In this document: in pieces, positions 740-63,345 of the stretch
Numbering within the stretch: position 1 is the first letter of the stretch
How the letters are laid out: every line of letters begins with the position of its first letter
Source: Sphyrna mokarran
Lineage: Eukaryota
NCBI GenBank assembly: GCA_024679065.1
Contig: JAGIQG010000009.1
Coordinates: forward strand, 102,610,001-102,674,000
Direction of reading: 5' to 3'
Length of the DNA: 64,000 bases
The notes under the pieces: generated by a model
The model's database searches: none
What the model saw: the letters and a program-made list of their open reading frames with translations, nothing else
What the model was told of the DNA's origin: nothing
Program-made: the position numbers and the translations under genes

Positions 740-901
740 GGCTGGCTCCTTCCGTGCTATTCGCCCAATCGCTCCCTTACAGCCCCAGTGGAGGCGGGAG
801 CGGGTGAATCCGGATCCCAGTCCGCTTTGTGAAGAGGGTGAGAGCGGGTCGGGGTCCAGACTGAGCTCTGGATGCTGGCTGGAAGTTAAGACGTTGCGGG
901 G
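740..901 (+). promoter_or_regulatory. Probable CpG-rich promoter/5' UTR of the Ig-5TM gene
   Basis: Locally CpG-rich unique sequence with CCAAT (~765) and GC-box-like GAGGCGGGAG (~791) just upstream of the leader ATG at 902. Confidence 0.4.
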
Positions 902-968
902 ATGGAGCAGTTATTCCGTCTCCTGTTGCTGCCTGTCCTCTTCCAACTCCGGGCCGGCGGTGCAGAAG
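902..968 (+). CDS. Ig-5TM gene exon 1: signal peptide MEQLFRLLLLPVLFQLRAGGAE
   Basis: ATG in good context (GGGATGG), hydrophobic core, and a phase-1 donor (AAG|GT at 969) that joins the IgV exon in frame. Confidence 0.8.
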
Positions 969-1125
969 GTGGGGGGGGAGGGGGTAAGGGGGGGGAGGGT
1001 AGGGGGGGGGAGGGGGTGAGGGGGTGAGGAGGGGGAGGGGGAGGGGGGTAAGGAGGGGGAGGGGAGGAGCGGGAGGGGAGATGAGGAAGGAGGAGGGAGG
1101 AGGGAGGGAGGGGGTGAGGGGTGAA
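969..1125 (+). repeat. G-rich low-complexity tract with G-quadruplex potential at the start of intron 1
   Basis: Dense G3-G8 runs separated by A/T. Confidence 0.75.
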
Positions 1126-1304
1126 ACAAGGAGAGAAGCAAGTCCCCAGCAACGGGGAATGAATGGGAGCCGACTCAATGAATTGGTCAAATCCCCTCTA
1201 CCCCTGTACAGGGATATACCGGAGTCACTGCACTCTGCAAATGGCGCTTTTTTTTCATTGCTCAGACTCAGCTTCACGTTCCTTCACTGAATTATCTCTG
1301 AAAA

Positions 1305-1560
1305 GGGCGGCACGGTGGTTAACAGTACTGCCTCTCAGCACCGGGGACCTTGGGTCCCATTCCTGCCTGCGGTGAAGCCTGTCTGTGTGGAGCTTGCACA
1401 TTCTCCCCGTGTCTGCGTGGGTTTCCTCCCGCACTCCAGAGATGTGCGGGTTAGGTGGATTGGCCATGTGAAATTAGTCCCGAGGTTGGGGGATTAGCAG
1501 GGTAAATGAGCATAGGGCCTGGGTGGGATAGTGTTCGTGCAGATTCAATGGGCTGAAACC
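1305..1560 (+). mobile_element. HE1/V-SINE-type tRNA-derived SINE (representative of the CR1-tailed subfamily)
   Basis: tRNA-like head and V-domain GTCTGTGTGGAG..TGCACATTCTCCCCGTGTCTGCGTGGGTTTCCTCC. Similar copies lie at ~6913-7712(-), 8345-8640(-), 9875-10312(-), 14535-14828(-), 29865-30186(+), 35300-35605(+), 39575-39865(-), 43322-43635(-), 45525-45805(-) and 48452-48725(+). Confidence 0.85.
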
Positions 1561-1569
1561 CTGCCCAAC

Positions 1570-2130
1570 CACTTTTCCCCATTCCCTCCCACAGCCTCTT
1601 TGCCCTCTTCCTCCCCCAGCCTTTATGCCCCCTTCCGTCCCTCCAGCATATTTGCCCCCTCCCTCCAGCATATTTGTCGCCTCCAGCCTCTCTGCCCACC
1701 CCCCTCCCCCGCTGGCCTCTCTGCCCAGCCCCCTCCTCCGCCAGCCTCCCCCACCGGTCTCTTCTGCCCTCCCCTCCCCTGGCCTCTTCTGCCCTCCGGC
1801 CTGTTTGCATCATCCCCTTTGCCCCTGTCTTCCCCTCACAGCCTTTTTGTCCTCATTCATTCCCCCCACCCCCATACCCCCCCCCCCATACCCACACCTT
1901 TTCTCCCTGACCTTTTCTCACCAGCTCTCTCCCAGGTGGATTCTTTGCCTCCTTGTCCTCACCCATCTCCCCCTGTACCCACACCTTTTCTCCCTGACCT
2001 TTTCTCACCGTCTCTCTCCCGGGTGGGCTCTTTGCCTCTGCCCCCTTTTCCCCACCTTGTGTCTTTGCTCCCCCACCTCCTTTCCCTTTGAGCTCTTTCT
2101 CTCTCCCTCTCCCCTCCTGTTTCCCTTCAG
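1570..2130 (+). repeat. C/T-rich low-complexity tract with an internal ~35-bp direct repeat
   Basis: Polypyrimidine tract; TACCCACACCTTTTCTCCCTGACCTTTTCTCACC occurs at ~1889 and ~1976. Confidence 0.7.
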
Positions 2131-2522
2131 GCTCTTTAAACCCATCCTGCCTGCCACTTGCACTACACTCAGGTCAATTCATACACTGCTGCTCCCCCCA
2201 AGGGAGTGCTGCGCAGTCAGAAGCCTTGTCTTTCGGGTGAGGTTGAAGAGTGTAGGAATTGTCCCCAGTGTTGTTAGCAGATATCAATCCCTCAAATCAA
2301 CACACCAAAAAAAAGCCCAGAAGTTTCCGGCTGGTAACCCTGCTGTCGTGAACGGAGATTTGGCTGAGGGTCAAATTTTCCATCCTCACTTGCAGCGGTG
2401 ACTGGCCATGAATGGCTTGTTGTTGTCACACTGCGGAATCAAGGTGTGCACAAACTGACAGTCATATTTTCTACATTAGGGCAGTGACTGTCCTTCGTTG
2501 TGTCCTTTCATGGGGCTATTTA

Positions 2523-5500
2523 AATACACTCGGAACGAGTGCCTAGTTCGAGTCTTTACGTCGCTCGTCGACGTTTTTGTCAACCTCTAGCGAAACCCCA
2601 GTCAGGGGGGCTCACTTGATCTTGATTGAGGTACGTGTGTTGGAGTCACCTCTAAGATGTTACTAGCTAGAGAACGTGAGTTGGGTTCACAGCTAAGGTG
2701 TTATAGCTAGGTCGTGTTGTCATCCCAGGTGTGTATGGGCTTACTGGTGAGCCAATTTTGTCGGTCCTTGGTACTCGGGTCTCTGTACCCGCATGCATGG
2801 GGTGTCAATTTAGAGGGAATCAGGCCGAATTAAGGGGGTTCATTTCATTGACACTTTAGTTTCGCCAATCAGCCTGTTATAGCACGTTTTTGGCCATGTG
2901 GGAGGAAACCGGAGTGCCCGGGGAAAACCCACGCAAGCACAGGGAGAATGTGCAAACTCCCGCAGACATTGACCTTGGCCGGTAATCCGCCCTTGATCTC
3001 TGTAACTGCCCAGCCGACAGTGCTAGTCACCGGGCTGACGTGCTGCCCAAAGTCAGTCCATGTCAGCTCACACTACCGGCAGTGAAGTTCTGGATCACTC
3101 TCAGATCTCCACCCAAGAACCATCCATGCACCACCCGCCGAGTGCATGCCCCTTGTCATAGACAAGGTGGACTGTGACACCTGTAGGTGTAATAGGTGTT
3201 AGTATACATATTTACACATCACACGCTGTACAGTATATACAAACACACAGTCCGACAAACACCAAAGAGTCCTCCATATTGACATATGGGCTCTGCAGAG
3301 GGCAGTTTGCCATGATGTCTGACAAGTGGCCAGCTTGTCCTCCGGTTGTGATTGCCTCTCACCTGTCGTTGAAGATCCCCAATATCTCCAACGTGAGTGA
3401 CAAGGTGAGCCTTGAAATTTGTTGGGCGAATGAACGGAATCTCTTTATTCCCAGGAAGGCCATGAGGCTGTTATTCTTTTCCAACCATTTGCTCCTGGCG
3501 CCAACAACAAATCCAAAGTATTTGGGGTTCGGGCATCCCGTCAATTCCTCAATTTCTGGTCCCAGATGTTGGTACTTCTGGCACTTTTCCTGCCACGCCT
3601 TCTCCAGACTGTCATAGTTGTCCTCAAACCGGACTGTCACATCCACCACCGCTACCTGCTGGTCCTTTTCCCTCTTGAAGACGATGTCCGGCTTCCAGAG
3701 GCTGCCGTCCTTGGCAATGAGCCTTGGCTCCAGGTATGATGTCCAGCCGTATTTTCCGACATACTTATGCAGTTGGTCCAGGATCTTATTATGGCGTTTG
3801 ATCCGGCAGTTTTTCACGAATGGGCAAAAGCCTGAAATGTGACCGAGTGTTTCAAGACCTGTCCCACACCTTCGACAGGTCTTTGTGGCAGAGGGGTTCC
3901 CTCTCGACAGGGTCACCCTCGTCGGGTATAGGTTGCACCGGAGTAGCATGTTATTTACCAGGCGATGGGACTTCAGCTGGTATGCAGCCTTCATCCAACT
4001 GTTTGAAATTCTGTCATCGTGGTAGTAGTGAACTCCCACTCCTTGTGATGTGAGCTGTCTCCACTTGTGGAATTCCCATTCCCTCCACCCAGCATATCTA
4101 TTCAGTGGTTTGCTGGGTCCTGTCTCCTCGGCCGCCAGTGTCGGCAGTGCGGCTCTGATCATGGCTGTTTCGTCATTGCCACCGTCTTCCCTTGTAGGCA
4201 TGAAGTCTTCGATGTCCCTCAAAGCCTTGAGGGATCTCAGATCTTCGATGTTTCTGCCAACGTCCTGTTCACAGAACTGGAATGAGGCGCGAATGACTTG
4301 ATCTGTGGAGGCAGACAGTGCTTCCCATTTTCGGATCACCGCAGATGGTATCTGGATCTCGAGCTTAGGAATGCCCAGACCTCCATTTCGCGCCCGCGAA
4401 TAGAGGATTCCATCTGTAGTATGAGGTGGAAGGTGCAGGAACTGCTTGACAGCATTGCATATTAATTGGTCCAGTTTTACCAGCGTGTTCTGTGACGCTC
4501 CAGTTAGGATCAGGTGATAGTACAGCCTTGGTATGACATGGACAGTTAGCAGCTCGACGCGTTGCCTTGGGCGAAGAGCTGCTGCTTGTAGACTGGAGAT
4601 CCAAGTCTTCAGCCTGTCCTCCCATGCTCCTTCTTCCACACCAGCCCACGGGTCTATCCGGGCTCCCAGTTATTTCTCTGTCTCACCTGGTGGGATGTAT
4701 GCAATCTCTTCCTTCTGAATCCTCCAGTTTTTGCATTGATTATAAATAAAGGTCTTCCTCTTACAGGTGAAGTGGAATCCTTTGGTCTTGTTGATGTTGA
4801 CAGTAAGACCAGTCATTTCGCAAAAAGTCTGAAGAACCTTCAGGTTCCGTACCATCCCGGTGTGCGAGTCACTGAGCAGGGCAATGTCATCAGCAAACGC
4901 AAGGGCGGAGCAGTTGATTCTCACTCCATCTAGCATCATACTGACACCAGACTTAGCCGCTTCCAGACTGCACAGCAGTGGATCCAAAGCAATATTGAAT
5001 AGTACCGGTGAGAGCGGGTCTCCTTGCTTGACACCCCTCTCGATTGTTATTGGGGTGGTTTTCGACTTGTCGCCTTCCACCACCGTTGTGTTGCCAGTGT
5101 AGAGATTCTGAATGAGCTCCACAAAGGCGTCTGGTAGTTTGACTCTCTGTAATGCTTTAAAGAGTAGTTTGTGACCAACTGAGTCGAACGCTTTCGCCAA
5201 ATCAACAAAGACGACTGCGAGGTCCTTGTGGTTTTTCTTAGCTCCCTTCATTATATTTTGCAACACTGCAATGTTCTCATTGCACCCGGAGTAGCTGCCA
5301 AAAACCCTTTCTGCCTTGGGTTTATGTCGACTGTCTCACTCAGTCGTTTCGCCATGATCTTTGTAAATAGGCGCAGCAGCATTGGACCGATGGTAATTGG
5401 TCGCCAGTTGTCAATATTTTTAAGGCGTTCCCTGTCCTCGCATTTTGGGATCAGGACCGTTCGACTCTGTTTCATACAGAGAGGGATCGTCTTTGAAGCC

Positions 5501-6886
5501 AACCACAAGGAGAAGAGACGAGGTATGCGGGTTTCGTAGGCCTCGTGTATCTTCCGGATGTCCTCCAATTTCTGCCCATCCGGTCCAGGCGCGCTATCCT
5601 CCTTTATGCCCTTGATGGCCTGGGTAACCTCCTCTTCGGTGATTGGCTTCATCAACTCACCGTTATCTGTATTCCCATTGTACGCTTGGAATTTATTGAT
5701 ATTTGCCTTATTGTTCTGACTGGAGAGTTTCTCCCGAAAGCTTGCCTCCAGTTCCTCAGTCGTAAGTGGACATTTCATTTGTGTAGGCGCGCCCATGATC
5801 TGCCGGGCTAGTTGACGCCTATTGTTCTTGTAGAGCATCTGTGTTGCTCTAAAGACGGATTTCTGTTTTGCCCATCGTTTCTTTGCTCCACTATTAACCT
5901 CGTGCCGAGGCCCTCGGTTAACTTTCTTTCGTGCCTTCTCTTTCGGACAAGCCTTCTTTTGCCCTTTTCCATCACCTCTCATCAGAAGGTCAGTGATGCT
6001 CTCGATTAAACCCACTGCCAGGGTTAGATCTTCAGGGTCGTTCCTCGCAGATAATAGCCTCTCGATTTGGCTGAGATTCTCCTCCACATCCCTATGCTTA
6101 GGGACATGTGCCATAGGCTGACTGATGGAACTTACCTGCGGTACCAGATCTCTGACATCTCCCTCTTCAGGCTCCTGTTCTCTCTCAGAGTCTGGGTTCT
6201 CAGCCACAACTGGGAGTGCGTTGTTTGCTGATTTGCGCGCATTTGCCAGCAGCCTGCGCTTTTCAGAGATTTGTTTGGCCGTTTTAGTTGTTAAAATACT
6301 CCCAATCTCTTTATTGATGTACCGGGCACCAACAAATCTCTGTTCAAGCTCCACGAGGAGCGATTCCTCCTCCTCGGACCATACGCTCTTACTTCTACCT
6401 CGTTTGGCTGGGGGCTTAGGTAGTGCCTTTTCCGCACGTTTTTCATTGCGGAGGACCGGGTGACGGTGTCGCTCATGCTGGCTGAGTCCACTTTCTGTAG
6501 TGAAGGCCAACTCACATGCACTGCACTTGTATTGACCCACTGCCAGAGGCTTCACGCCCTGACATTTTGGGTAGTGGCAGGCAATTGAGTGGTACTCACC
6601 AGTCCTCCCGCACCGAGCACACTTAGTCACGATCTTCTTGGTCCTGTGCACTTTCTTGAGATGGTCTCTGAAAGCCCCAACCGAGGAGTGTATGGACTTG
6701 CAAGGCTTGCAATACAACGCATCAGTAGGGTAATGGATCACCACCTCCTTAACCTCTGAGCGGTCCTCTGTAGATGTTATTGTAATTGTCTCGATGAAGG
6801 TGCCCTCCTCCTGAGCACCTCCATCGCTTGCGGTATTTTGGCTGTTATCATTATTTCCCAAGCCCTTATTCAGGGCTAAATATGCC
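2523..6886 (-). mobile_element. R2-clade non-LTR retrotransposon, 5'-truncated, inserted outside rDNA
   Basis: Single ORF (3359-6886) broken by one frameshift (~5280) and one in-frame stop (4670, KYLG to K*LG). It encodes three N-terminal zinc fingers, a Myb domain (WSEEEESLL..KTAKQISEKRR), RT (GVKQGDPLSP, LAFADD), a CCHC knuckle and a restriction-like endonuclease (RHN, KPDIV, VDVTVRFE, KCQKY). It has an ~835-nt 3' UTR and a candidate 5-bp TSD ATTTA at 2518-2522 and 6887-6891. Confidence 0.9.
2850..3215 (-). ncRNA. Structured 3' UTR cassette in the R2 element: TACTAAC branch point, CTACAG|G acceptor, multi-stem RNA and degenerate tRNA-head/V-SINE domain
   Basis: Colinear similarity and compensatory base changes relative to 26410-26770 and 55550-55880. 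Confidence 0.6.
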
Positions 6887-7351
6887 ATTTAGAGCTTGGG
6901 GTGTACTGAGTTCATAGAATCCCTACAGTGAAAGAGGAGGCCGTTTGGCCCATCAACCCCGCACCAACAACAATCCCATCCAGGCCTTACCCTGTAACCC
7001 CATGTATTTACCCTAGCTAGTTCTGCTGACACTAAGGGGCAATTTAGTTTGGCCAATCACCGTAACTGCCTCATCTTGGGGCACTAAGGAGCAACTTAGC
7101 ACGGGCAATCCACCTAACCCGCACATCTTTGGAGTGATGTGGAGGTGCCAGCATTGGACTGGCACAGTAAAAATTCACACAATACCTGTCCAACAGGTTT
7201 ATTTGATATCACAGGCTTTCGGAGGCTACTCCATTAGAGAGTGGAGAGTTGGGTTCACAAGCATGGCATATATACACAGAGACTCAATTGCAAGATAATG
7301 ATTAGAATGTGAGTCTTTTCAGATAATCAAGTCTTTGGAGTGTGGGAGGAG

Positions 7352-25824: not shown

Positions 25825-26914
25825 AGACAGTTACACTGATTCACTCGCCTGGGTCCCCCGCTGGCAGCAGCAATCCCGGTATATTTACTGTGGGAGTTTA
25901 AAGACGGCACTTTCCCCCACCTGGCCACTCTCCTACCTTCTGCTGTCCCTGCAGCCAGGCCTGATTAGGCCCCACATTCCAGAGAGTGCAGAGGAGGTTT
26001 ACCAGGATGCTGCCTGGTATGGAAGGTCTGAGTTACGAGGTGAGGTTAGGCAAATTGGGGCTGCTTTCCTTAGAAAGACGTAGACTTAGAGGAGATCTCT
26101 TAGAGGTGTACAAGATTATGAGGGATATAGATAGAGTAAACAGGGTTGAGCTCTTTCCTAGGATGGACTCGAATAGCACGAGGGGTCACAGGCTTAGGGT
26201 GAGGAGGGTAAGATATAATTTGGATGCTAGAGGGAGTTTTTTCACACAGAGGGTGGTGGGGGTGTGGAATGCGCTGCCAAGTGAAGTGGTGGAGGCAGGT
26301 ACTCTGGAGTTATTTAAGAAATACTTAGATGTGCGCATGAACAGAATGGGAATGGAGGGGTATAGAAAACTGATTTAAAATAGGGATCATGAGCCTTGGG
26401 AGTCCCTGGGAAGTGTGTAAATAGATGATGATATTGATGCACTTGTTTTTATCCTACAGGTGCTTTGGTCCACCTTGTTGTCTAACAAGGGGCATACACG
26501 CGATGGGTCATGAGAGGGCTGCTCTTGGATTTCTTTTTTCGAGAGTATCCTAGTGCTTCACATCATTAGTGTACACTTGACCTGGACCATTTGATGGGCA
26601 ACAGGACAGTTCAGTGACTATCGCTGTGCTATGCAGATACATGGATTTGGGTCTGTGTCTGTGGGAGTTTGCGCATTCTCCCCGTGCTTGTGTGGGTTTT
26701 CTCCGAGTGCTCCGGTTTCCTCCCACATCCCAAAGATGTGCTCTTAGGCTAATTGGCAAAACAAATTCTCCTTAAATTGTCTCAAATTTGGTTTTTAATC
26801 CATAGATCTATAAACATAGACAGGGATTGCGGGTAGATGTGGGAACATCGGGGTGACGGCGTGGGCTCGTTGAGCCGAAGGGCCTGTTTCCTGTGCTGTT
26901 TTGTTCTTTGTTCT
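25825..26914 (+). mobile_element. CR1-family LINE 3' portion with an unusually long (~540 nt) composite 3' UTR
   Basis: ORF2 C-terminus 25981-26378 (ERRRLRGDL), then the structured cassette and V-domain, then a CR1-type tail with (TTCTTTG)n; TSD-like TTGAGTC at 25818-25824 and 26915-26921 inside a Rex1 relic. Confidence 0.85.
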
Positions 26915-28766
26915 TTGAGTCTTTTGGTACATGATCTCAGAATTTTGTATCTTTTTCCTGATGGAAGAAGGTGGAAGAGAGAACGTCTGAGATACATGGC
27001 ATCCTGGGCTGCTTTGCCGAGGCAGTGGGAAGTGTGACAGAGTCAATGGATGGGAGGCTGGTTTGCGTGATGGATTGGGCTACATTCATAACCTTTTATA
27101 ATTTCTCGTGGTCTCGGGCAGAAAAAGAGCCATACCAAGCTGTGATACAACCAGAAAGAATGCCTTCTAAGATGCATCTGTAAAGTTGGAGTTGTAGCTG
27201 ACATGCCAAATTTCCTTAGTCTTCTGAGAAAGTAGAGGTGTAGGTGGACGTAGGTGAGAAGGAAAAGAGAGGTGCAGAATTAGTATTACAGTCATAGCTA
27301 GTGTTTAGAGAAAAATCAACTTATAAGGTGATTTTTTTTTTTGAATGAATATAACTCCTATCAAAAGTCTGATGGCAACAGGAAAGAAGATGGTCTTGAT
27401 CCAGTTGGCATGTGATCTCAGACTTCTGGATCTTTTTTCCAATGGAAGGAGGTGAAAGAGAGTATGTCCAGAGTGTATTGGGTCTTTGAATATGCTGCAA
27501 CTTTTCCAAGGAGTGGGAAGTGTAGACGGAATTGATGCATGGGAGGCTGGTTTGAGTGATGGAGCCTTACCAAGCTATGCTACATCCAGAAAGAATGCTT
27601 TTTATGGTGCCTCTGTGAATGTTAGCGAGAGTCGTAGTGGGCGTGCCGAATTTCCTTAGCGTCCTGAGAAAGTGGAGGCGTTGGTGGGCTTTCTTAACTG
27701 TAACGTCAGCATGAAGGACTAAGACTGGTTGTTAGTGATCTGAATGTTTAGAAAATGAAGCTGTCAACCAGTTCCACATCATCCCGTGGGGAGCAGTGCA
27801 AGTAGGAGGGTCAATAATAGTCATCAATTTGAAGGTTACCTCTTTAAACTTGCTAATGAGCTAGGAGAGAAGACAGCAAAAATTTCTTGATGTTGAGTGT
27901 TTGCACACAGATTACTCTGTCACATGGAGCAATTGTTCTTTCAAATTCATTCATTCATGAGATGTGAGTGTTGCTGGCTAGGCCAGTGATTATTGCCCTA
28001 TTTGTCTATGTGAAGGTAGCAGTGAGCTGCCTTCTTGAACCAGTGCAATTCATGAGGTGAAAGGACTCTGACAATGCTGGTAGGCAGGAAGTTGTGGTGA
28101 TGGCGGATGTAGTTTTTAAAAATTTATTCAGTCTTAGAACATGGGCGTCACTGGTTGGCCAACATTTATTGTCCATCCCTAGTTGCCTGAGGGCATTTGA
28201 GAGTCAACCACATTGCTGTGGCACTGTAAGCCAGACCAGATGGTAGATTTCCTTCCCAAAAGGACATTAGTGAACCAGTTGGGTTTTCTTGATAATGGTC
28301 ATTAATAGGTTCTTAATTCTGGATTTTTTTATTGAATTCAAATTTCACCATCTGCCATGGCAGGATTCGAACACAGGTCACCAGGGCATTAGCTGAGTTT
28401 CTGGATTAACAGTCTAGTGACAATGCCACTCGGCCATCACCTGCTTTATGAGCGGATGATGATGTATTTCGAGTCAGAAAGTTGTAGGACTTTGAGGGGA
28501 ACTCGAAGCTGGTGAAGTGCCCTTTTTCCTGAGGCAGTGAGAGTTAAGATAAAAATGGGGAGGCGGTGAAGCAGTGAAACTTAATTTAGAATTACTCTTG
28601 CAAATTACTGGATGGACTTAACGAGTCAAATAATGCCTTCTCTGCTCGTAAACATATGTAAGTCTATCAATGAGCAATTTCATGAAGGAATGTGTAATTT
28701 TCATTTGTATTCATTTTTTAGCTAATCAGCGTATGTAATTTTATTCACCTTTTGTTCTTTACTTAG

Positions 28767-44420: not shown

Positions 44421-46390
44421 CCTTTCACTTCAGTTACACATGATAAATAGCCAGGAAATGTGGCACAGTGGTTAGCACTGCTGCTTCACAGCGCTGGGGA
44501 TCTGGGTTCAATTTCAGACTTGGGTCACTGTGCTGAGCCTGTACATCTTCCCTGTCTCTGCATGGGTTTTCTCCAGGCACTCGTTTCCTCCCACAATCTG
44601 AAAGATGTGCTGGCGTTAGGAGCATTGGCCGTGCTAAATTCTCCCTCAGTTTACCTGAAGGGATGGAGATGGGGTGTGATGACTAGAGGATTTTCACAGT
44701 AACTTCATTGCAGTATTAATGTAAACCTACTTGTGACACTGATAATAATAACAACTTGGGAATTCAAGGGCATAGATTGGAAACACTCAAGTCCTGAAAA
44801 AAAATGTGCCAAACCTGATAATGGAATTGTTAACAAGACTTTATACACTTCCTCTCTATTTCTCTATCTTGATTTAAAATTCTCCAAAATCCATTTCTGT
44901 CATCCAGATTAATATTTTCTTTTTTGTCTCTTTGTCAATTTTCTTTATAATGCTCTTGTGAATTTCCTTTAGGGCATCACGTTACATTAAAAGTATCGTA
45001 TAAATACAAGTGTACATTGTTGTGGTTGTTAAGAACTTCAACGGGGCACAGGAAGTTGGCTTCCTGTAGTATGAACTCCCTGACAGAGGTGGTAATCAGT
45101 GATTCTCATCTGTATATAAAACTGGGAGTGTCAGGTCTCCTGGCACTGCGGATTCTGGCTGCTTACCTGAAGCAGACTTTTGAGTGGAATAGAGTTTGTA
45201 GATAAAGTGAATCTGGTGAGGGAACAGCGGCCCACAAGGAGCTATTTCACAGAACCAGTTTGTATTTAGAATAAAAATAAAGTCCGTAAATGTGTGAAGT
45301 TATTGGGTTGTTCAGACTCTGTGCACATGACCCGCTCCTTGGAAACATCAGCTGTGTGGTTTTTACAGGATGAGTGGGAAGTCACAGACACAAACAGCCA
45401 ACGTTACTTCCGGCCTGGAAATCAGTTTGTATTGTTTACACTTTACCAGGTTCCACTATTGTAGAACCGTTACGTTAAATCACTGTAATAAAGGCAGGCA
45501 TTACAAAACTTTTGCCCCGAACTAACAGAATCATGGAATTCCTACAGTGCAAAAGGAGGCCAATTGGCCCATCGACTCTGCACCAATAACAATCCCATCC
45601 AAACCCTTTCCCTAACATTTATCCTGCCAGTCCCCCAGTCACTAAGGGGCAATTTAGCATGGCCACTCCACAAACCTGCACATCTTTGGACTGTGACAGG
45701 AAAGCCACACAGACACAGGAGAATGTAGAAGCTCCACACAGACAGGTACAGGATTTGAACACAGGTCCCTGGTGCTGTGAGGCAGCAGTACTAACCACTG
45801 TGCGGCATCAAAAATGTGATGCTGAACATGGGGCTCTTGATTAAAAGTCTCGTGCTTTACCAACTGCGCTAGGTGGGCTTTGTCGACTGAGATAGCTGGA
45901 CTGTTCCGGCTGAGTTAGCTGGGCTCGACCAGGCAGTTGGTGGAGTTTTGGTGGCCCAATAAACGGCTATTTAATGTTGTGACAACAACTACTTAAATAA
46001 ATCACAATATCAGTTCACTGAGTTTATTTTACCAAATGGCAGAGTTTCAGTGAAGAACGTGTCCTATCTTCTCTTCTGACAAAACCTTCTCCTGAAAGAA
46101 ATGGATGAGGAACAGTGAGGGTAACAGTGACAAGTTTCAGGAGGAGTTCAACACACTGGTGAAATCCGAGCAGACTCGGAACAGATGAGATTTCACACGA
46201 AAGTGTAAGGTGATGCATTTGGAATGAAGATTGTGGAGAGTCAAATAAACTGGAATTGAACATCAGTCTCCACTCACAGACACAGAGGCTGGAATTATAC
46301 TGCTCCATCCACCAAGGGCATCAGAGCGGGTGGGAGAGGGGGGCAGACAATAAAATGGTCCATTTACCTCAAGCAGGATTTCATGGTTTC

Positions 46391-46626
46391 AAAGAACAAA
46401 GAGCAAAACAGCACGGGAAACAGGCCGTTTGGCCCAACGAGCCCGCGCCGCCACCCCGATGTTCCCACTTCTACCTGTGATCCCTGTCTATGCTTATAGA
46501 TCTATGGATTAAAAACCAAATTTGAGACAATTTAGGGAGAATTTGTTTTGCCAATTAGCGTAAGAGCACATCTTTGAGATGTGGGACGAAACCGGAGCAC
46601 CCGGAGAAAACCCACACCAGCACAGG
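46391..46626 (-). mobile_element. 3' end of the composite-UTR CR1 family
   Basis: Near-identical to 26680-26917 and 55393-55635. Confidence 0.85.
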
Positions 46627-54249: not shown

Positions 54250-56715
54250 TATATCGAAGGAGGAAATATTGGGTATCCTAAATTGCATCAAGTAGATAAA
54301 TATCTGGGACCTTAACAGATATCTTCACATCCTCGTTGACCACAGGCAAGGTTTCAGAGGACTGGAGAATAGTCAATGTCATCGTTCCCTTGATTAAGAA
54401 AGGAAGTGGGAATAATCCAGCAAATATTGGGCCGGTGAACCTGACGTTTGTGGTAGGGAACATTTTGGAGAATATATTGAGGGACAGGATATATTTGCAC
54501 ATTTGAAAGAAACTGGACTAGTTAGTGCTGAGCTGCATTGTTTTGTATAGGGAAGGTCATGTCTCACCAACTTGATTGAATTTTTTGAATAGGTGACAAA
54601 GATGATTGATGAGGGAAGGGCTGTGGATGTAGTTTATATGGACACGAGAAAGGCATTTGACAAGGTCCCACGTGGCAGACTAGTACAAAACCTAAATTCA
54701 CATGGGATTTGGTATGGATTAGCTAGATGTATATAGAACTGGCTTGGACATAGACAACAGAAAGTAGCAGTGGAAAGATTTTTTTCAGAATGGAGATCTT
54801 TAGCTAGTTGTGTTCTGCAGGAATCAATGCTGGGACCTCTATTGTTTGCAGTATATTTAAATAACCTAGAGGAAAATGTGGGTGGTCTGATTAGTAATAT
54901 TGTGGATGACAAAAATTGGTGGAGCTGCTGATAGTGCTGGGGATTGTTAGAGAATATACCAGGATAGAGATAGATTGGAGACTTGGGCACAGAAATGGCA
55001 GGTGGTGTTTAATGCAGATAAATGCGAGATAATATATTTTGGAGAATTAAATTTAGGTGGCAATTATACTGTAAACAGCAGAACATTTAGGAACATTAAT
55101 ACACAAAGAGTCTGGGTATGCAGATCCACAGTTCTATAAAAGTGGCAACACAAATGGCCAAGATGATTAAGAAGACATACAGCATTCTTACCTTCACCCA
55201 CTGGGGCGTTGCACACAAAAGTTGGCAAATAGCCTTTATAGTCTTATCTATAAAGAGAGGTTGGATAAACTTAATTTATTCTCACTGGAAAGATGGAGGT
55301 TGAAGGGTGATCTGATAGAGTTTTAAAAAATTATAAGGGGCATGGACAGGGTGGATAATCAGATACTGTTTCCTAGAGCAGAAAAGTCAATTAAAGAACA
55401 AAGAACAAAAAACAAAACAGCATGGGAAACAGACCCTTCGGCCCAATGAGCCCGTGCCGCCACCCCGATGTTCCCACTTCTACACGCGATCCCTGTCTAT
55501 GTTTATAGATCTATGGATTAAAAACCAAATTTGAGACAATTTAGGGAGAATTTGTTTTGCCAATTAGCCTAAGAGCACATCTTTGGGATGTGGGAGGAAA
55601 CCCGGAGCACCCGGAGAAAACCCACGCAAGCACAGGGAGAATGCGCAAACTCCCACAGACACAGGCCCAAATCCATGTATCTGCACAGCACAGCGATAGT
55701 CACTGAGCTGTCGTGTTGCCCATCAAATGGTCCAGGTCAAGCGTACACTAACAACGTGAAGCACTAGGATACTCTCAAAAAAATCCAAGAGCAGCCCTCT
55801 CACGACCCATCGCGTGTATGCCCCTCGTTAGACAACAAGGTGGACCAAAGCACCTGTAAGATAAAAACAAGTACATCAATAATAAAAACAAGTACATCAA
55901 TAAGGGACATTAGTTTATGCTGCATGGGGAAAAGTTTAAAGGCAAATTTTTTACATAAAGCATGGTGAATTTCTGGAATGCCTGGAGAGGTAATGGGAGC
56001 AGGTATGATGATGGCATTTAAGGAGCAACTAAAATATTACATGATTAGGATGGGAATGGAAGGATATGTTCTCCATAAGCGCAGTTTGGAGAGCTGAAAG
56101 GCCTATTTCTGTCCCGTAGTGCTCTTTGTTCTTTGTAAATCATGTTGCAGCTATATAAAATGTTGGTTAGGCTGCATTTAGAGTTTTGTGTGCAATTCTG
56201 GTCACCACACTACCAGAAGGACGTGGAAGCCTTGGACAGAGTGCAAAGAAGTTTCATCAGACTATTGCCTGCTCTCGAGGGTGTTGGTTATGAGGAGGGT
56301 TGAATAAACTGAGATTGTTTTCTCCAGAAAGACAGAGGCTGAGGGGAGATCTAACAGAGGTGTACAAAATTATGAGAGGCATAGACAGGGTGGAAAGTCA
56401 GAGATATTTCTTCCAAGGTGGAAGTATCATTTGTAAGGGGCACAGGTTCAATGTGAGGGGAAAGTTTAAGGGAGATATGCGGGGTTAAGTTTTTCAAGCA
56501 GGGAATGATGGGTGCCTAGAATATGCTGCCAGAGGAGATGGTGGAAGTAGGCAGTTCAGCAACATTTTGAGAGCCATCTGGAAATAGGGAGGAAATAGAG
56601 GGATATGGACAGAGTAAGGGAGGAAGTTTTTTTTTCGGTTTAGATGGGGCAGCATAGTCGGTGCAGACTTGGAGGGCTGAACGGCCTGTTCCCGTGCTGT
56701 ACTTTTCTTTGTTCT
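54250..56715 (+). mobile_element. Degraded CR1 ORF2 relics (two copies), the first interrupted by the 55393-55900 insertion
   Basis: Decayed SCLTNLIEFF, KAFDKV and ERQRLRGDL motifs plus CR1 tails. Confidence 0.75.
55393..55900 (-). mobile_element. 3' UTR-only copy of the composite-UTR CR1 family (cassette, V-domain and tail)
   Basis: Highly similar to 26432-26917; the 5' end lies at the branch/polypyrimidine tract, with a 20-bp tandem duplication ATTGATGTACTTGTTTTTAT. Confidence 0.85.
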
Positions 56716-59402: not shown

Positions 59403-62400
59403 TTGTTCCCTTGGAGCAGCACGGAGAGGCAGCGATTTGGGAAAGCGTGAAGTTCGAGTGTTAAGTACTTTTTTAACTTTTCTCTTTGTTTAAAATAGCG
59501 AGCGGGGGTAGTTTTTGCCGTTTTTATTTTAAACTAACAAGAAACCGGAAGTCGTCATTAGGAGGCTGCCGGGAGTTGTAGTTTTCTCTGTCTCTATAAA
59601 TTGGTCCAGAGAGGACCAATCCGAGAGGTTGAGGAGGATATTGGCAGGAGTGACAAAGAGATAGTCACTCCTAAAAGTGATTCGTGGGTAACTATTAGGA
59701 GGAGGGGTAAGAAGCAATTGGGTAGACAATCCCCTGGGGCTGTTCCCCTCCAAAACAAATTTTCTGTCTTGGAGGCTACAGTTGAGGAAGAATCAACTGG
59801 AGATGACCAAAGGGAGCAGGTCTCTGGGGGTGAGCCTGCTGAGAATGCTCAGGTGGGTAGGGAGAATAAGAGATTGGGCTTAGTAATTGGAGACTCCACA
59901 GTTAGAGGGACAGATAGGAGAGTAAGTAGTAATAAAAGTGACTCAGGGCTGGTGTGTTGCCTCCCAGGGGCTGGAGTCCAGGATGTCGCAGATCGGGCTT
60001 TTAAGGTTCTTAAGGGAGAGGGGAGTCAACCCCAAGTCATAGTTCATGTAGGGACACATGATATAGGAAGGACGAGGGAAGGGGATATTAAACAGAAATT
60101 TATGGAGTTGGGGTGGAAGCTTAGGGCCAAAACTGGCAGAGTGGTTATCTCTGGACTCTTGCCTGTGCCAAGGGATAGTTTAGAGAAGAAGAGAGAGAGG
60201 GAATGTTTGAACTCGTGGCTGCGGGGATGGTGCAGGAGGGAGGGGTTCAGGTTCCTGAACAATTGGGACTCCTTCTGGGATAGGTGGGACCTCTACAAGA
60301 GAGATGGTCTACACCTGAACCAGAGGGGAACTAATATCTTGGGGGGAAAATTTGCTAAGGCTATGCAGGGGGCTTTAAACTGATCCGGGGGGGGGTAGGA
60401 TCCTGAATAGTTGGGGTGCTAAGAGGGATGAGAGTAAGGGGGTCATAGAGGAAAGCTGTAAAACACAGCAGCATACGGGTGGGGTAGGGCATGGTTTGAA
60501 ATGCGTATACTTTAATGCAAGGAGTATTCGCAATAAGGGGAGGAACTTGCAGCTTGGACCAGTACCTGGAACTTCGATGTTGTGGCCATTTCAGAGACTT
60601 GGGTAGAGCAGGGACAAGAATGGATGTTGCAGGTTCCAGGGTTCAAATGCTCTAGTCGGAGTAGAGAAGGAGGTAGAAGTGGGGGAGGAGTGGCATTATT
60701 AGTCAAAGACTGTATCACAGTGACAGAGAAGAAGTTTGATGAGGACTTGTCTGTTGAGGTAGTATGGGGTGAGATTAGAAACAGGAAAGGAGAGGTCACC
60801 CTGTTGGGAGTCTTTTATAGACCTCCTAAAAGTTCTAGAGAGGTTGACGAAAGGATTGCCAAGTCAATTCTGTTCAGGAGTGAAAGTAATAGGGTAATTG
60901 TTATGGGGGACTTTAACTTTACTAATATTGATTGGAATAGCTATAGCTCTAGCTTGTTAGAGGGGTCAGTTTTTGTACAAAGTGTGCAGGAAGGTTTTTG
61001 ACTCAGTATGTAGATAGGCCAACTAGAGGTGAGGCTACATTGGATTTGGTGCTGGGCAATGAGCCAGACCAGGTGTTAGGCTTGGAAGCTGGTGAACATT
61101 TTGGTGATAGTGACCACAATTCGGTTACATTCACCTTAGTGATGGATAGGGATAGGCATGAAGCTGGAGGCAGTAGTTATAGCTGGGGGAAGGGTAATTA
61201 TGAGGCCATAAGGAGAGAATTAGGGTGCATAGGTTGGACTAAAACTACAGGGACTGGGAACATCTGAAATGTGGAGCTTATTCAAGGAGCAGCTGCTGCG
61301 AGTCCTTGATAAGTATGTCCCTGGCAGGCAAGGAGGAAATGGTCGAGTAAGAGAACCTTGGTGTACGAAAAAAGTTGATTTGCTGGTTAAAAGGAAAAAG
61401 GAGGCTTATGTCAGGATGAGGCTTGAAGGTTCGGTTAGTGCAATGGATAGCTATAGATTAGCCAGGAGGGAGCTAAAGAGTGAATTGAGGAGAGCTAAGA
61501 GAGGACACGAGAAGACTTTGGCTGATAGGATTAAGGAGAATCCAAAAGCTTTCTTTAGATATGTTAAGAATAGAAGATTGGTTAGGGCAAGATTAGGGCC
61601 AGTCATAGACAGCAGTGGGAAGTTGTGCGTGGAGCCTGAAGAGATTGGAGAGGCACTGAATAAATATTTCTCTTCGATATTCAGGCAGGGTGATGTAAAT
61701 GTAGTTATGGAGAACACTGAGGTACAGGGTAGCAAACTGGAAAGTATCGAAGTAGATAGGGAGGATGTGCTAGATATTCTCGAGGGTTTGAAGTTGGATA
61801 AGTCCCCTGGGCCGGACGGGATTTACCCTAGGATGCTCTGGGAGGCAAGAGAGGAGATTGCAGAGCCTCTGGCTCTGATCTTCAGGTCCTCGTTGGTTAC
61901 GGGTGTGGTTCGGAGGACTGGAGGATAGCGAATGTGGTCCCATTGTTTAAGAAGGGGAAGAGAGACCTTCCAGGGAATTATAGGCCAGTGAGTTTTACTT
62001 CTGTTGTGGGCAAGGTATTGGAGAGAATTATTAGGGATAGGATTTATAGTTATTTAGAGAGAAATGAATTGATTGGGGATAGTCAGCATGGTTTCGTGAA
62101 GGGTAGGTCATGCCTTACTAACCTCATTGAGTTTTTTGAGAAAGTGACCAGAGAGGTGGATGGGGGGTAAGGCGGTTGATGTAGTATATATGGACTTTAG
62201 TAAGGCGTTTGATAAGGTGGCCCATGGAAGACTTCTACAGAAAATGCAGATGTGTGGAATAGAGGGTGATTTAGCTAATTGGATAGGAATTGGCTGGCAG
62301 ATAGAAGACAGAGGGTGGTGGTTGATGGGAGATATTCATCGTGGAGTTCGGTGACAAGTGGTGTGCCTCAGGGGTCTGTTTTGGGCCCCTGCTGTTTGTA

Positions 62401-63345
62401 ATTTTTATAAATGATCTGGATGAGGGTATTGAGGGATGGATCAGTAAATTTGCAGATGACACTAAAGTCGGTGGAGTGGTAGATAGTGAAGAGGGTGTTA
62501 TAGTTTGCAGAGGGACTTGGACAAGTTGCAGAGCTGGGCCGAGAGGTGGCAAATGGAGTTTAATGTGGAAAAGTGTGAGGTAATGCACTATGGCAGAACT
62601 AATAAATGTGTAGAGTATAGGGCAAATGGTAGGATTCTTAGTAGTCTAGATGAACAGAGGGATCTTGGTGTGTATGTGCATCGATCCCTGAAAGTAGGCA
62701 GTCAGGTCGAGAAGGTTGTTAAGAAGGCATATGGAGTCTTAGCTTTTATTGGTAGGGGGATTGAATTTCAGAGCCGCAACGTCATGTTGCAACTGTACAA
62801 AAACCTAGTGCGGCCGCACTTGGAGTATTGTGTGCAGTTCTGGTCCCCACAGTATAAGAAAGATGTGGAGGCATTGGAGAGGGTACAGAGGAGGTTTACC
62901 AGGATGTTGCCTGGTATGGAGGGCAGGTCTTATGAAGAGAGGCTGAGGGATTTGAGGTTGTTTTCATTAGAAAGGAGGCGGCTAAGAGGGGAACTAATCG
63001 AAACATATAAGATGATTAGAGGTTTAGATAGGGTGGACAGTGATAGCCTCTTTCCTAGGATGGAGAAAGCTAGCACGAGGGGACACAGCTTTAAATTAAG
63101 GGGTGATAGTTATAGGACGGATATCAGAGGTAGGTTCTTTACCCAAAGGGTGGTTCGGAAGTGGAATGCCCTGCCTGCGGAGGTTGTAGATGCGCCAAGT
63201 TTGGTGGCGTTTAAGAGGTTAGTTGATAAGTATTTGGAAGAGAAGGGAACGGTTTAGTTTGGAGGGGCATTGCTTTTTATATTGGTCGGTGCAACATCGA
63301 AGGCCGAAGGGCCTGTTCTGTGCTGTAATGTTCTATGTTCTATGC
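59403..63345 (+). mobile_element. Near-full-length CR1 LINE with disrupted ORFs
   Basis: ORF1 SGNH/esterase domain (IGDS, LPGA, HVGTHD, DGLHL; 59601-60383) and ORF2 APE plus RT in several frames, CR1 tail; TSD-like TCTAAAC at 59396-59402 and 63346-63352. Confidence 0.93.

What the first reader, a model, noticed from the sequence alone, without database searches (positions are those of the whole stretch)
2850..3215. Structured splice-acceptor/V-SINE cassette shared by the 3' UTRs of two unrelated LINE clades (R2 and CR1)
Seen in sequence: the R2 3' UTR (minus strand) and the CR1-family 3' UTR (26410-26770, again at 55550-55880) are colinear over ~330 nt, although their ORFs belong to distant clades (RLE-type versus APE-type). 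Shared anchors are TGTGTAAATA, CTACAGGTG, GTCCACCTTGT..ACAAGGGGCAT.CAC, TCTTGG.T..GAGAGT.ATCC, CTTCAC..TAGTGT..TGAC.TGGAC, then GGGCA.CA...CAG..C.GTGACTA and the V-domain. Differences are compensatory: hairpin CCTTGTC/GACAAGG versus CCTTGTT/AACAAGG; stem TCGGCGG/CTGCCGG versus GCGATG/CGTTGT; inner stem TTCTTGGGT/ATCCAGAA versus GCTCTTGGAT/ATCCTAGTGC around a conserved GAGAGT; and a closing GTCCA/TGGAC helix. The tRNA-derived head has degenerate Pol III A and B boxes in both, with the same A-box change (CAG..C.GTGACTA), so two independent SINE insertions are unlikely. Inference: a selected, exchangeable RNA module carried as cargo by autonomous retrotransposons. Possible roles include export, stability, translation control, or a decoy/mimic of the dominant V-SINEs. 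I do not recognise it as a described element.
Basis: partly seen in the sequence, partly recalled or inferred. Interest (0 to 1): 0.9.

Follow-up and report, generated by a model that had tools for sequence, protein, structure and literature searches.

The report
RNA module shared by two LINEs
Two unrelated families of jumping genes in a shark-like genome carry the same non-coding block of about 370 letters, a folded leader plus a worn-out V-SINE, in their tail regions, so such blocks can pass between retrotransposon lineages and be kept there.

Summary
The R2 3' UTR (minus strand, about 3215-2845) is colinear with a CR1-tailed family at 26413-26790 (+), at 55881-55545 (-), and in part at 46626-46389 (-). 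Identity by segment is 65-68% for the leader, 68-71% for the tRNA-like head and 86-90% for the V-domain. It falls to about 42% outside these segments.

- **Single origin.** The SINE part of the four LINE-borne copies forms one group, with 99/97 support, against 15 ordinary V-SINEs.
- **Fixed in the R2 family.** Raw reads give the leader the same depth as the R2 ORF (55 against a mean of 74; flank about 0.15). Contigs from a second species label also cover it. It is therefore not a private insertion.
- **CR1 version.** It follows a CR1 stop codon directly. Its in-window copies have 5' ends at three different points. Reads suggest about 10^4 copies.
- **Leader fold.** The roughly 150-nt leader is kept across about 33% divergence. 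Only two independent lineages support this.
- **Not supported or not shown.** I found no evidence of splicing, and the function is unknown.
- **Other evidence.** Rfam has no match, and no paper I found describes the module. First-stage notes of this scan report the same module on other DNA of this genome.

Verdict: a real LINE-SINE chimera module shared across clades. Selection on it is plausible but not shown.

The parts
2330..6920 (-). R2-clade LINE copy. The 5' end abuts the tail of an ordinary V-SINE. The 3' end is placed only to about +-50 nt.
   Evidence: ORFs. PDB R2 proteins match at E about 1e-73 over the N-terminal and C-terminal parts. RVT_1 is found. Read depth drops from about 60 to about 0.15 within bin 2248-2421.
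3359..4639 (-). Last R2 ORF piece (thumb, CCHC, restriction-like endonuclease). The stop codon is at 3359-3361.
3216..3358 (-). R2-specific proximal 3' UTR.
   Evidence: About 42% identity to the CR1 copies in a forced alignment, which is no homology.
2845..3215 (-). Shared module in the R2 3' UTR: a 10-mer anchor, a spacer, the leader, the decayed tRNA-like head, the V-domain and a short post-V stretch.
3045..3192 (-). Structured leader, R2 version. It has a closing helix, a 7-bp hairpin and a long arm ending in a 10-13 bp hairpin.
   Evidence: MFE -62.9 kcal/mol, z -3.4. Consensus of 49 pairs. Permutation tests.
2969..3044 (-). Decayed tRNA-like head. The A box is altered and the B-box region is present but degenerate.
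   Evidence: Alignment with ordinary V-SINE heads. ARAGORN finds no tRNA in the window. No Rfam tRNA hit at E up to 5.
2880..2968 (-). V-domain (the highly conserved domain of V-SINEs).
   Evidence: 86-90% identity to the CR1 version. The motif has 21 matches in the window against 0.65 expected. Reads pile up here to about 1000x.
2330..2844 (-). R2-specific distal 3' UTR. It has no similarity to the CR1 copies.
   Evidence: Local alignment score 17 against a shuffled mean of 16.5. Read depth 60-66, like the R2 body.
25975..26920 (+). 5'-truncated CR1-group LINE copy: ORF2 C-terminus, a short generic UTR, the module, then a SINE-like post-V stretch and the CR1 tail with a (TGTTCTT)n-like end.
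   Evidence: tblastn gives 60% amino-acid identity over 127 residues to the in-window CR1 ORF. The ORF is 25986-26378. No second CR1 tail lies behind 26920.
26413..26790 (+). Shared module, CR1 version. The leader is 26451-26600. The head lacks the 19-nt B-box stretch. The V-domain is about 26650-26740.
55399..55881 (-). Second CR1-family copy. It starts about 20 nt into the module's spacer with a 20-nt tandem duplication, and it is inserted antisense into another CR1 ORF fragment.
   Evidence: 93.0% over 487 nt to the 26.4 kb copy. Sequence and flanks. Host CR1.
46389..46626 (-). Third CR1-family copy, 5'-truncated inside the V-domain.
   Evidence: 92.0% over 238 nt. Sequence.

Best explanation
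The feature is a non-coding module of about 370 nt with a single origin. It has a roughly 150-nt multi-helix leader followed by a promoter-dead tRNA-V SINE remnant.

It is now a fixed part of the 3' UTR of two autonomous LINE families with different integration machineries:
- a dispersed R2-clade family (restriction-like endonuclease), on the order of 10^2 copies, with a UTR of about 1 kb;
- a very abundant CR1-group subfamily (AP-type endonuclease), on the order of 10^4 3' ends.

In both it sits in the permissive interior of the UTR, between the stop codon and the clade-specific 3' end where reverse transcription starts.

Most likely history (inferred):
1. A CR1-mobilised V-SINE became joined to a CR1 transcript or copy through the tail they share. 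The CR1 version is colinear with ordinary tRNA-V-CR1 SINEs down to the last base.
2. The block 'leader + head + V' was later copied into the R2 UTR, or into both LINEs from one non-autonomous donor. The route was template switching of a reverse transcriptase, or insertion followed by loss of the tail.

Since then both lineages have carried it as part of their Pol II or read-through transcripts. The tRNA promoter decayed, and the B box was lost in CR1. The leader's fold and the V-domain were kept. This suggests a cis-acting role in the LINE sense RNA, such as stability, export or RNP assembly. That role is not shown.
For: **Shown**
- Colinearity with sharp edges.
- One group at 99/97, found in 98% of 200 bootstrap trees, for the 4 LINE-borne head+V rows against 15 ordinary V-SINEs.
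- The R2 identity of the ORF.
- The AP-endonuclease/esterase nature of the in-window CR1, whose C-terminus matches the ORF before the module.
- Read depth: flank about 0.15, distal UTR 60-66, leader bin 55, R2 ORF mean 74 (range 35-110). Contig X2 spans 2945-3415 and bridges the leader to the ORF end. Organism B contigs cover the same bins.
- 4445 reads leave the V-domain at 2968 into sequence of the CR1 version.
- The three CR1 copies have 5' ends at three different points.
- The CR1 version is colinear with ordinary V-SINEs to the tail.
- Promoter decay.

**Fold**
- z is -3.4, -2.2 and -2.7 on the sense strand against -1.6 and -1.1 on the antisense strand.
- 97.2% of 145 cells are paired. 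7 pairs are changed on both sides, against 0-2 in the six slid controls. 2 of 500 shuffles reach the observed values.
- A structure predicted from one lineage alone is kept in the other: P = 0.0003, 0.014, 0/20000 and 0/20000.
- The same test is weaker on the antisense strand (P 0.009-0.24) and in the head+V control (P 0.0046-0.47).
Against: - Only two independent lineages carry the leader; the 26.4 and 55.8 kb copies are 95% alike. Covariation statistics are therefore thin.
- One of four sense tests gave only P = 0.014. One of four control tests reached P = 0.0046.
- The consensus structure was derived from the same three sequences.
- CR1 ORF adjacency is seen in one in-window copy only. Other windows are covered only by unchecked first-stage notes.
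- The direction of transfer is not resolved. The R2 version keeps the B-box stretch that the CR1 version lacks, and its post-V part looks more like ordinary V-SINEs. Neither present form is therefore the other's parent.
- Only 15 of 78 joints were shown, so R2 copies without the module cannot be excluded.
- No function was tested.
Confidence: 0.55

Rival explanations
1. Neutral passenger. The block was captured as described, but it does nothing. LINE 3' UTR interiors tolerate cargo. The apparent fold conservation comes from a G+C-rich palindromic sequence and a tiny sample.
For: - The block sits outside the parts known to be needed: the 3' tail for stringent CR1-type LINEs, and the 3' end of the UTR for R2. 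Passages of PMC12247875 describe using only the 'R2 3' UTR 3' end' as template.
- A precedent for pure hitch-hiking of a V-SINE in another transposon is MER6 (PMC6887750, passages read).
- One control region reached P = 0.0046 in 1 of 4 tests.
- There are only two lineages.
Against: - Both LINE lineages kept the block through about 33% divergence of the leader, while sequence just outside it is unalignable.
- 7 pairs are changed on both sides against 0-2 in slid controls.
- The signal is stronger on the sense strand than on the antisense strand.
Confidence: 0.3
2. One composite non-autonomous element (leader + tRNA-like part + V + CR1 tail, about 500 nt) is the true unit. It entered the R2 UTR and fused to CR1 independently. 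Most of the roughly 10^4 copies are this element and not LINE 3' ends.
For: - Three boundaries cluster within about 40 nt: the start of R2 homology (the 10-mer at 3215 / 26413), the 5' end of the 55.8 kb copy with its target duplication, and the end of the generic CR1 UTR in the 26.4 kb copy.
- Copy number is very high.
- One first-stage note on other DNA reads it as a composite SINE (s1-887293, unchecked).
Against: - No Pol III promoter is recognisable. ARAGORN finds 0 tRNAs. The A box is altered, the B box is deleted in the CR1 version, and the head lies about 170 nt from the 5' end.
- The leader matches no Rfam small RNA at E up to 5.
- The R2 version has no CR1 tail.
- One copy is truncated inside the V-domain and one is continuous with a CR1 ORF.
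- Five first-stage notes on other DNA report CR1 ORFs continuous with it (unchecked).
Confidence: 0.2
3. The head of the block is a working 3' splice site (pyrimidine tract plus CAG|GTG). It would give a spliced subgenomic LINE RNA or trap host exons.
For: The motif is kept in all three copies. A first-stage note makes the same suggestion (s1-887774).
Against: - In the consensus fold the motif is one strand of the outermost helix (helix 1), which explains its conservation.
- The X2 contig over 2945-3415 runs through it unspliced, and none of the 15 joints shown (of 78) lies at about 3178.
- X2 is only guessed to be RNA.
Confidence: 0.05

Closest known systems
V-SINE superfamily (HE1 of sharks and rays, DANA, Lun1 and others; Ogiwara et al. 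2002, known to me from citations in PMC4824008 and PMC3747384; the paper itself is not held)
   Same: The tRNA-derived head and the conserved V-domain are in the same order. The CR1 version also has the CR1-derived post-V part and tail of ordinary tRNA-V-CR1 SINEs.
   Different: It is embedded in the 3' UTRs of autonomous LINEs. The promoter boxes are decayed or deleted. A 150-nt structured leader precedes it, which none of the 15 ordinary V-SINEs aligned from this window has. The R2 version has no LINE tail of its own.
MER6/MER6A MITEs carrying a captured V-SINE (Luchetti et al. 2019, PMC6887750, passages read)
   Same: A V-SINE that lost its head function is spread as cargo of another transposable element.
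   Different: That carrier is a DNA transposon derivative. Here the carriers are two autonomous non-LTR retrotransposon clades, and they share an extra structured leader.
R2 families with foreign sequence in the 3' UTR (28S-derived stretch; Kojima et al. 2016, PMC5035012, passages read)
   Same: The R2 3' UTR takes up and keeps foreign RNA-derived sequence upstream of its own 3' end.
   Different: The captured sequence here is a SINE plus leader shared with a CR1 family. It is not the element's own target.
SINE bodies derived from LINE parts, and module exchange among SINEs (Kojima 2018, PMC5786205, abstract and Discussion read)
   Same: Modular shuffling between LINEs and SINEs by template switching.
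   Different: Kojima reports LINE 5' parts (RTE, Vingi) inside SINEs and states that no LINE counterpart of the conserved SINE bodies had been found. Here a conserved SINE body sits in LINE 3' UTRs.
LINE/SINE pairs sharing a 3' tail (stringent type; UnaL2/UnaSINE1, ZfL2; PMC1636434 and PMC4176376, search listing only)
   Same: RNA elements in the 3' UTR are shared between different retroposons.
   Different: In those pairs the shared part is the terminal recognition stem-loop of one LINE clade. Here the shared part is internal and is common to two clades whose terminal parts differ.

Membership tests
V-SINE superfamily | Central V-domain of about 80 bp | tested here: met
   The V-domain aligns with 15 ordinary V-SINEs of the window. 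The motif has 21 matches against 0.65 expected.
V-SINE superfamily | tRNA-derived head with working A and B boxes at the 5' end of the unit | tested here: not met
   Homology to the head is present. However, ARAGORN finds no tRNA, Rfam gives no tRNA hit at E up to 5, and the B-box stretch is deleted in the CR1 version. The head lies about 170 nt inside the unit.
V-SINE superfamily | LINE-derived 3' tail directly used for mobilisation | tested here: inconclusive
   The CR1 version ends in a CR1-type tail colinear with ordinary V-SINEs. The R2 version has none.
R2 clade of non-LTR retrotransposons (the carrier at 2330-6920) | Single ORF with N-terminal zinc fingers and Myb, RT, then C-terminal CCHC and a restriction-like endonuclease | tested here: met
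   phmmer against PDB R2 proteins (9dou, 9nl3, 9nl2) gives E about 1e-73 for both the N-terminal 545 aa and the C-terminal 426 aa pieces. RVT_1 is found. In this copy the ORF is in three pieces.
R2 clade of non-LTR retrotransposons (the carrier at 2330-6920) | Insertion at the specific 28S rDNA site | tested here: not met
   Rfam finds no rRNA in the window or near the 3' end. The 3' flank is single-copy by read depth. The family is dispersed. A short 28S-like relic at the junction was not testable.
CR1 group of LINEs (the carrier at 25975-26920) | ORF2 with AP-type endonuclease and RT, often an esterase ORF1, and a 3' end with a stem and a short tandem repeat instead of poly(A) | tested here: inconclusive
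   This copy holds only the last 130 aa of the ORF, and these have no Pfam hit. They are 60% identical over 127 aa to an in-window LINE. A near full-length relative of that LINE, at 59601-63340, has a GDSL esterase ORF1 and Exo_endo_phos. The tail is shared with other CR1 ends in the window. The finer clade (CR1 against L2 or Rex1) was not tested.
Rfam RNA families (any described structured RNA) | A score at or above a family's gathering threshold | tested here: not met
   There were 0 matches in the window at gathering scores. E-value scans up to 5 gave no hit inside the module.

The most novel reading that the evidence does not exclude
The leader plus V-domain would be a portable cis-acting RNA element that benefits any retrotransposon RNA carrying it, whatever the reverse transcriptase or endonuclease. 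It might recruit a host factor for export, stability or RNP assembly. This would explain two things at once: why an RLE-type and an APE-type LINE both keep it, and the long-standing puzzle of why the V-domain stays conserved across SINE families.
Probability: 0.2. Interest if true: 0.8.

Novelty: new variant of a known kind. Interest (0 to 1): 0.55.

Why it matters
The role of the highly conserved SINE domains (V, CORE, Deu) is still called unclear (PMC11481361, passages). Kojima (PMC5786205, Discussion) notes that no LINE counterpart of these bodies had been found.

A V-domain block kept inside the 3' UTRs of two autonomous LINE clades offers a natural experiment. The clades use different endonucleases and different 3'-end recognition. 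If the block matters, it must act on the RNA and not through one particular reverse transcriptase. Its leader has a concrete, testable fold.

The finding also documents lateral exchange of UTR modules between LINE clades. It shows an R2 lineage that lives dispersed outside the rDNA at about 10^2 copies. If the block is only a passenger, the finding is still a clean example of LINE-SINE-LINE chimerism. In that case it is ordinary in kind.

Tried and rejected
- **Known RNA family.** Rfam at gathering scores gave 0 hits on the whole window. E-value scans of 2250-3400 and 26350-26950 gave only two weak hits outside the module, CRISPR-DR22 at E 0.29 and SNORD95 at E 3.7, and none in the CR1 copy. 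ARAGORN found 0 tRNAs.
- **More copies in the window.** A covariance model of the leader found only its three training copies at E up to 10.
- **Copies elsewhere.** One pattern scan of metagenome contigs gave a single hit, L001. It shares the hairpin only, with no flank similarity, which is about what chance predicts for 22 fixed bases in a collection of that size (my estimate). I rejected it.
- **Homology beyond the module.** None was found downstream.
- **Donor direction.** This is not resolved.
- **Papers.** Six answered searches found no description of a V-domain or this leader in an R2 or CR1 3' UTR. Ogiwara 2002 (PMC155270) is not held. Supplements were not opened, so the repeat libraries and R2 tables in the supplements of PMC12247875 and PMC13343379 could hold these families.
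- **Rows dropped.** Of the 21 V-motif hits I aligned 19. I left out 25140 and 50638, both 2-mismatch hits, without a test. In the tree, row 46593 is truncated inside V and carries unrelated flank, which gives it a long branch.
- **Copy numbers.** These are rough. The flank depth rests on very few reads, and the genome size is unknown to me.
Full report
**What is there**

On the minus strand, 6888-3359 holds an R2-type ORF in three pieces.
- The pieces match solved R2 proteins (9dou, 9nl3, 9nl2) at E about 1e-73. The match covers the N-terminal zinc-finger/Myb part and the C-terminal part through the endonuclease. The middle piece has RVT_1.
- The stop codon is at 3359-3361.
- Downstream, from about 3215 to 2845, the sequence is colinear with 26413-26790 (+) and 55881-55545 (-) (alignment A1).
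- blastn gives 70.8% over 336 nt (E 4e-34) to the 55.8 kb copy and 82.4% over 119 nt to the 26.4 kb copy.
- The 26.4 and 55.8 kb copies are 93.0% alike over 487 nt. A third copy at 46626-46389 (-) is 92.0% alike over 238 nt and begins inside the V-domain.

**Boundaries**

| Segment (R2 coordinates) | Identity, R2 version vs CR1 version |
|---|---|
| Leader, 3045-3192 | 65-68% |
| tRNA-like head, 2969-3044 | 68-71% |
| V-domain, 2880-2968 | 86-90% |
| Post-V, 2845-2879 | 68% |
| Either side of the module | about 42% (no homology) |

A local alignment of the R2 distal UTR with the CR1 post-V part and tail scores 17, against a shuffled mean of 16.5. Upstream, only the 10-mer anchor stands out, with score 20 against 14.6 +- 2.4.

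**The SINE part**

The window has 21 matches to a V-domain motif, against 0.65 expected. I aligned 19 of them and left two 2-mismatch hits out.
- Fifteen are ordinary tRNA-V SINEs. Their tRNA-like head, with recognisable A and B boxes, starts the element. None has the leader.
- The R2 and CR1 versions share derived states in the head and the V-domain.
- The CR1 version lacks a 19-nt stretch that includes the B box. The R2 version keeps that stretch in degenerate form.
- In a maximum-likelihood tree of head+V, the four LINE-borne rows are one side of a branch with 99/97 support, found in 98% of 200 bootstrap trees. One of the four rows is truncated and carries flank.
- ARAGORN finds no tRNA in the window. 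Rfam gives nothing in the module even at E up to 5.
- From the head to its last base, the CR1 version is colinear with ordinary tRNA-V-CR1 SINEs. It differs in the terminal repeat unit.

**Is it part of the R2 family?**

I laid raw WGS reads of the same species label (X9, 1.9 Gb read) and Logan contigs of three other runs on 1900-7100 at 90% likeness. Depths below are the two directions summed.

| Region | Depth |
|---|---|
| 1900-2247 (flank) | about 0.15 |
| 2248-2421 | 31 |
| Distal UTR | 61 and 66 |
| Two bins holding the V-domain | 1115 and 881 |
| 3118-3291 (half the leader plus the proximal UTR) | 55 |
| Twenty ORF bins | 35-110, mean 74 |

- The R2 family is therefore multi-copy, on the order of 10^2 copies. 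Its 3' end lies near 2330 +- 50, which gives a UTR of about 1 kb. The leader has the depth of the element.
- A contig of another sample (X2, 2945-3415, 5 differences) bridges the leader to the ORF end.
- A run under another species label (X3) covers the same bins at its usual depth.
- No joint that skips the block is among the 15 shown of 78.
- The refuting scenario of a private SINE insertion in this R2 copy is therefore rejected.

**The CR1 side**

- The 26.4 kb copy follows a 130-aa ORF end (25986-26378). That ORF is 60% identical over 127 aa to an in-window LINE ORF.
- A near full-length relative of that LINE, at 59601-63340, has a GDSL esterase ORF1 and an Exo_endo_phos domain.
- After the stop come about 35 nt. 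By eye, the first part resembles the generic CR1 UTR. Then come the module, then the SINE-like part and the CR1 tail.
- No second CR1 tail lies behind 26920.
- The 55.8 kb copy is a separate insertion. It has an imperfect 8-10 bp target duplication and a 20-nt duplicated 5' end, and it sits antisense in another CR1 fragment.
- The three in-window copies have 5' ends at three different points, which is the LINE pattern.
- In one search, 4445 reads leave the V-domain at 2968 into sequence that matches the CR1 version. This suggests on the order of 10^4 copies. Another 815 reads at 2897 belong to a third, intermediate subfamily.
- First-stage notes of this scan on other DNA of the genome describe a CR1 lineage with a V-SINE in its UTR five times, the R2/CR1 sharing once, and a 'composite SINE' once. 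These are unchecked leads. I could not read that DNA.

**The leader's fold**

- Each version folds better than its shuffles on the sense strand (z -3.4, -2.2, -2.7). The antisense strand is weaker (-1.6, -1.1).
- RNAalifold predicts 49 pairs in five helices. Seven pairs are changed on both sides.
- On this structure 97.2% of 145 cells pair. 2 of 500 column shuffles reach the observed values. The six slid controls give 40-45% pairing and 0-2 double changes. This structure was derived from the same sequences.
- As a less circular test, I predicted the MFE structure from one lineage alone and asked how many pairs survive in the other. The null permuted the substitutions among columns. The sense leader gave P = 0.0003, 0.014, 0/20000 and 0/20000, with 3-6 double changes against about 2 expected.
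- The same test on the antisense strand gave P = 0.028, 0.24, 0.086 and 0.009. On the head+V region it gave 0.14, 0.0046, 0.079 and 0.47.
- The signal favours a sense-strand RNA structure. It rests on two independent lineages only.

**How it most likely came about and works**

Shown:
- single origin;
- fixation in the R2 family;
- continuity with a CR1 ORF in one copy;
- promoter decay;
- a position between the stop codon and the clade-specific 3' end in both LINEs.

Inferred:
- A CR1-mobilised V-SINE became the 3' part of a CR1 lineage through the shared tail.
- The block was then copied into the R2 UTR, or into both from one donor, by template switching or by insertion with loss of the tail.
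- Neither present form can be the other's parent. The R2 version keeps the B-box stretch, and the CR1 version keeps the tail.
- The retained fold and the very conserved V-domain suggest a cis-acting role in the LINE sense RNA. No function is shown, and a neutral passenger remains a serious rival.
- The splice-acceptor idea has no support. The motif is one strand of the outermost helix (helix 1), and a contig runs through it unspliced.

**Comparison with what is known**

- V-SINEs are defined by the tRNA head, the V-domain and a LINE tail. Here the domain is met and the working head is not.
- A V-SINE carried by another transposon is known for the MER6 MITEs (PMC6887750, passages).
- R2 UTRs that hold foreign sequence are known (PMC5035012, passages).
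- Kojima's survey found LINE 5' parts in SINE bodies but no LINE counterpart of the conserved bodies (PMC5786205, Discussion).
- Recent R2 and CR1 surveys that include sharks do not mention such a UTR in the passages I read (PMC12247875, PMC13343379). Their supplements were closed.
- Six answered literature searches found no description.
- I therefore rate it a new variant of a known kind, a LINE-SINE chimera with module exchange. It has a modest chance of being a portable functional RNA element.

Noticed in passing
window 2330-6920 and flank 1900-2330: This R2 family lives dispersed outside the rDNA at roughly 10^2 copies. Read depth is about 74 over the ORF against about 0.15 in the 3' flank, and Rfam finds no rRNA in the window. 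First-stage notes on other DNA mention 28S relics at R2 ends. By eye, a short stretch near 2356-2364 recalls the 28S target downstream sequence, but I did not test this.
   Followed up: partly
window 6921-7140: The 5' end of the R2 copy abuts the 3' tail of an ordinary V-SINE. The copy seems to lack a 5' UTR. Its reading frame is interrupted twice, and reads suggest at least one interruption is private to this copy.
   Followed up: no
window 59601-63340: A near full-length CR1 sits here. It has a GDSL-esterase ORF1, an Exo_endo_phos domain, an RT C-terminus and a short 85-nt UTR with the usual CR1 tail. It makes a useful contrast with the long-UTR subfamily.
   Followed up: partly
window 2897 (reads): At this point 815 reads leave the V-domain into a sequence intermediate between the R2 and CR1 versions. 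A third subfamily of this V type therefore exists in the genome, but not in this window.
   Followed up: no
window 55860-55905: The 55.8 kb CR1-family copy starts with a 20-nt tandem duplication of its own 5' end, next to an imperfect target duplication. This may be a footprint of template jumping at the end of reverse transcription.
   Followed up: no
window 900-2150: A long purine/pyrimidine-rich, low-complexity stretch with two repeated units of about 100 nt. It produces spurious proline-rich ORFs on both strands.
   Followed up: no
runs X3, X4: Runs under other species labels hold R2 sequence that is 90-99% like this copy. Pieces differ by 1.5-5.5% in the ORF and by about 5% plus gaps in the distal UTR. 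The family is therefore shared among related species.
   Followed up: partly
L001 2554-2581: A G+C-rich microbial-eukaryote-like metagenome contig carries the same 11+11 nt hairpin arms, with no other similarity. I take this for chance.
   Followed up: yes
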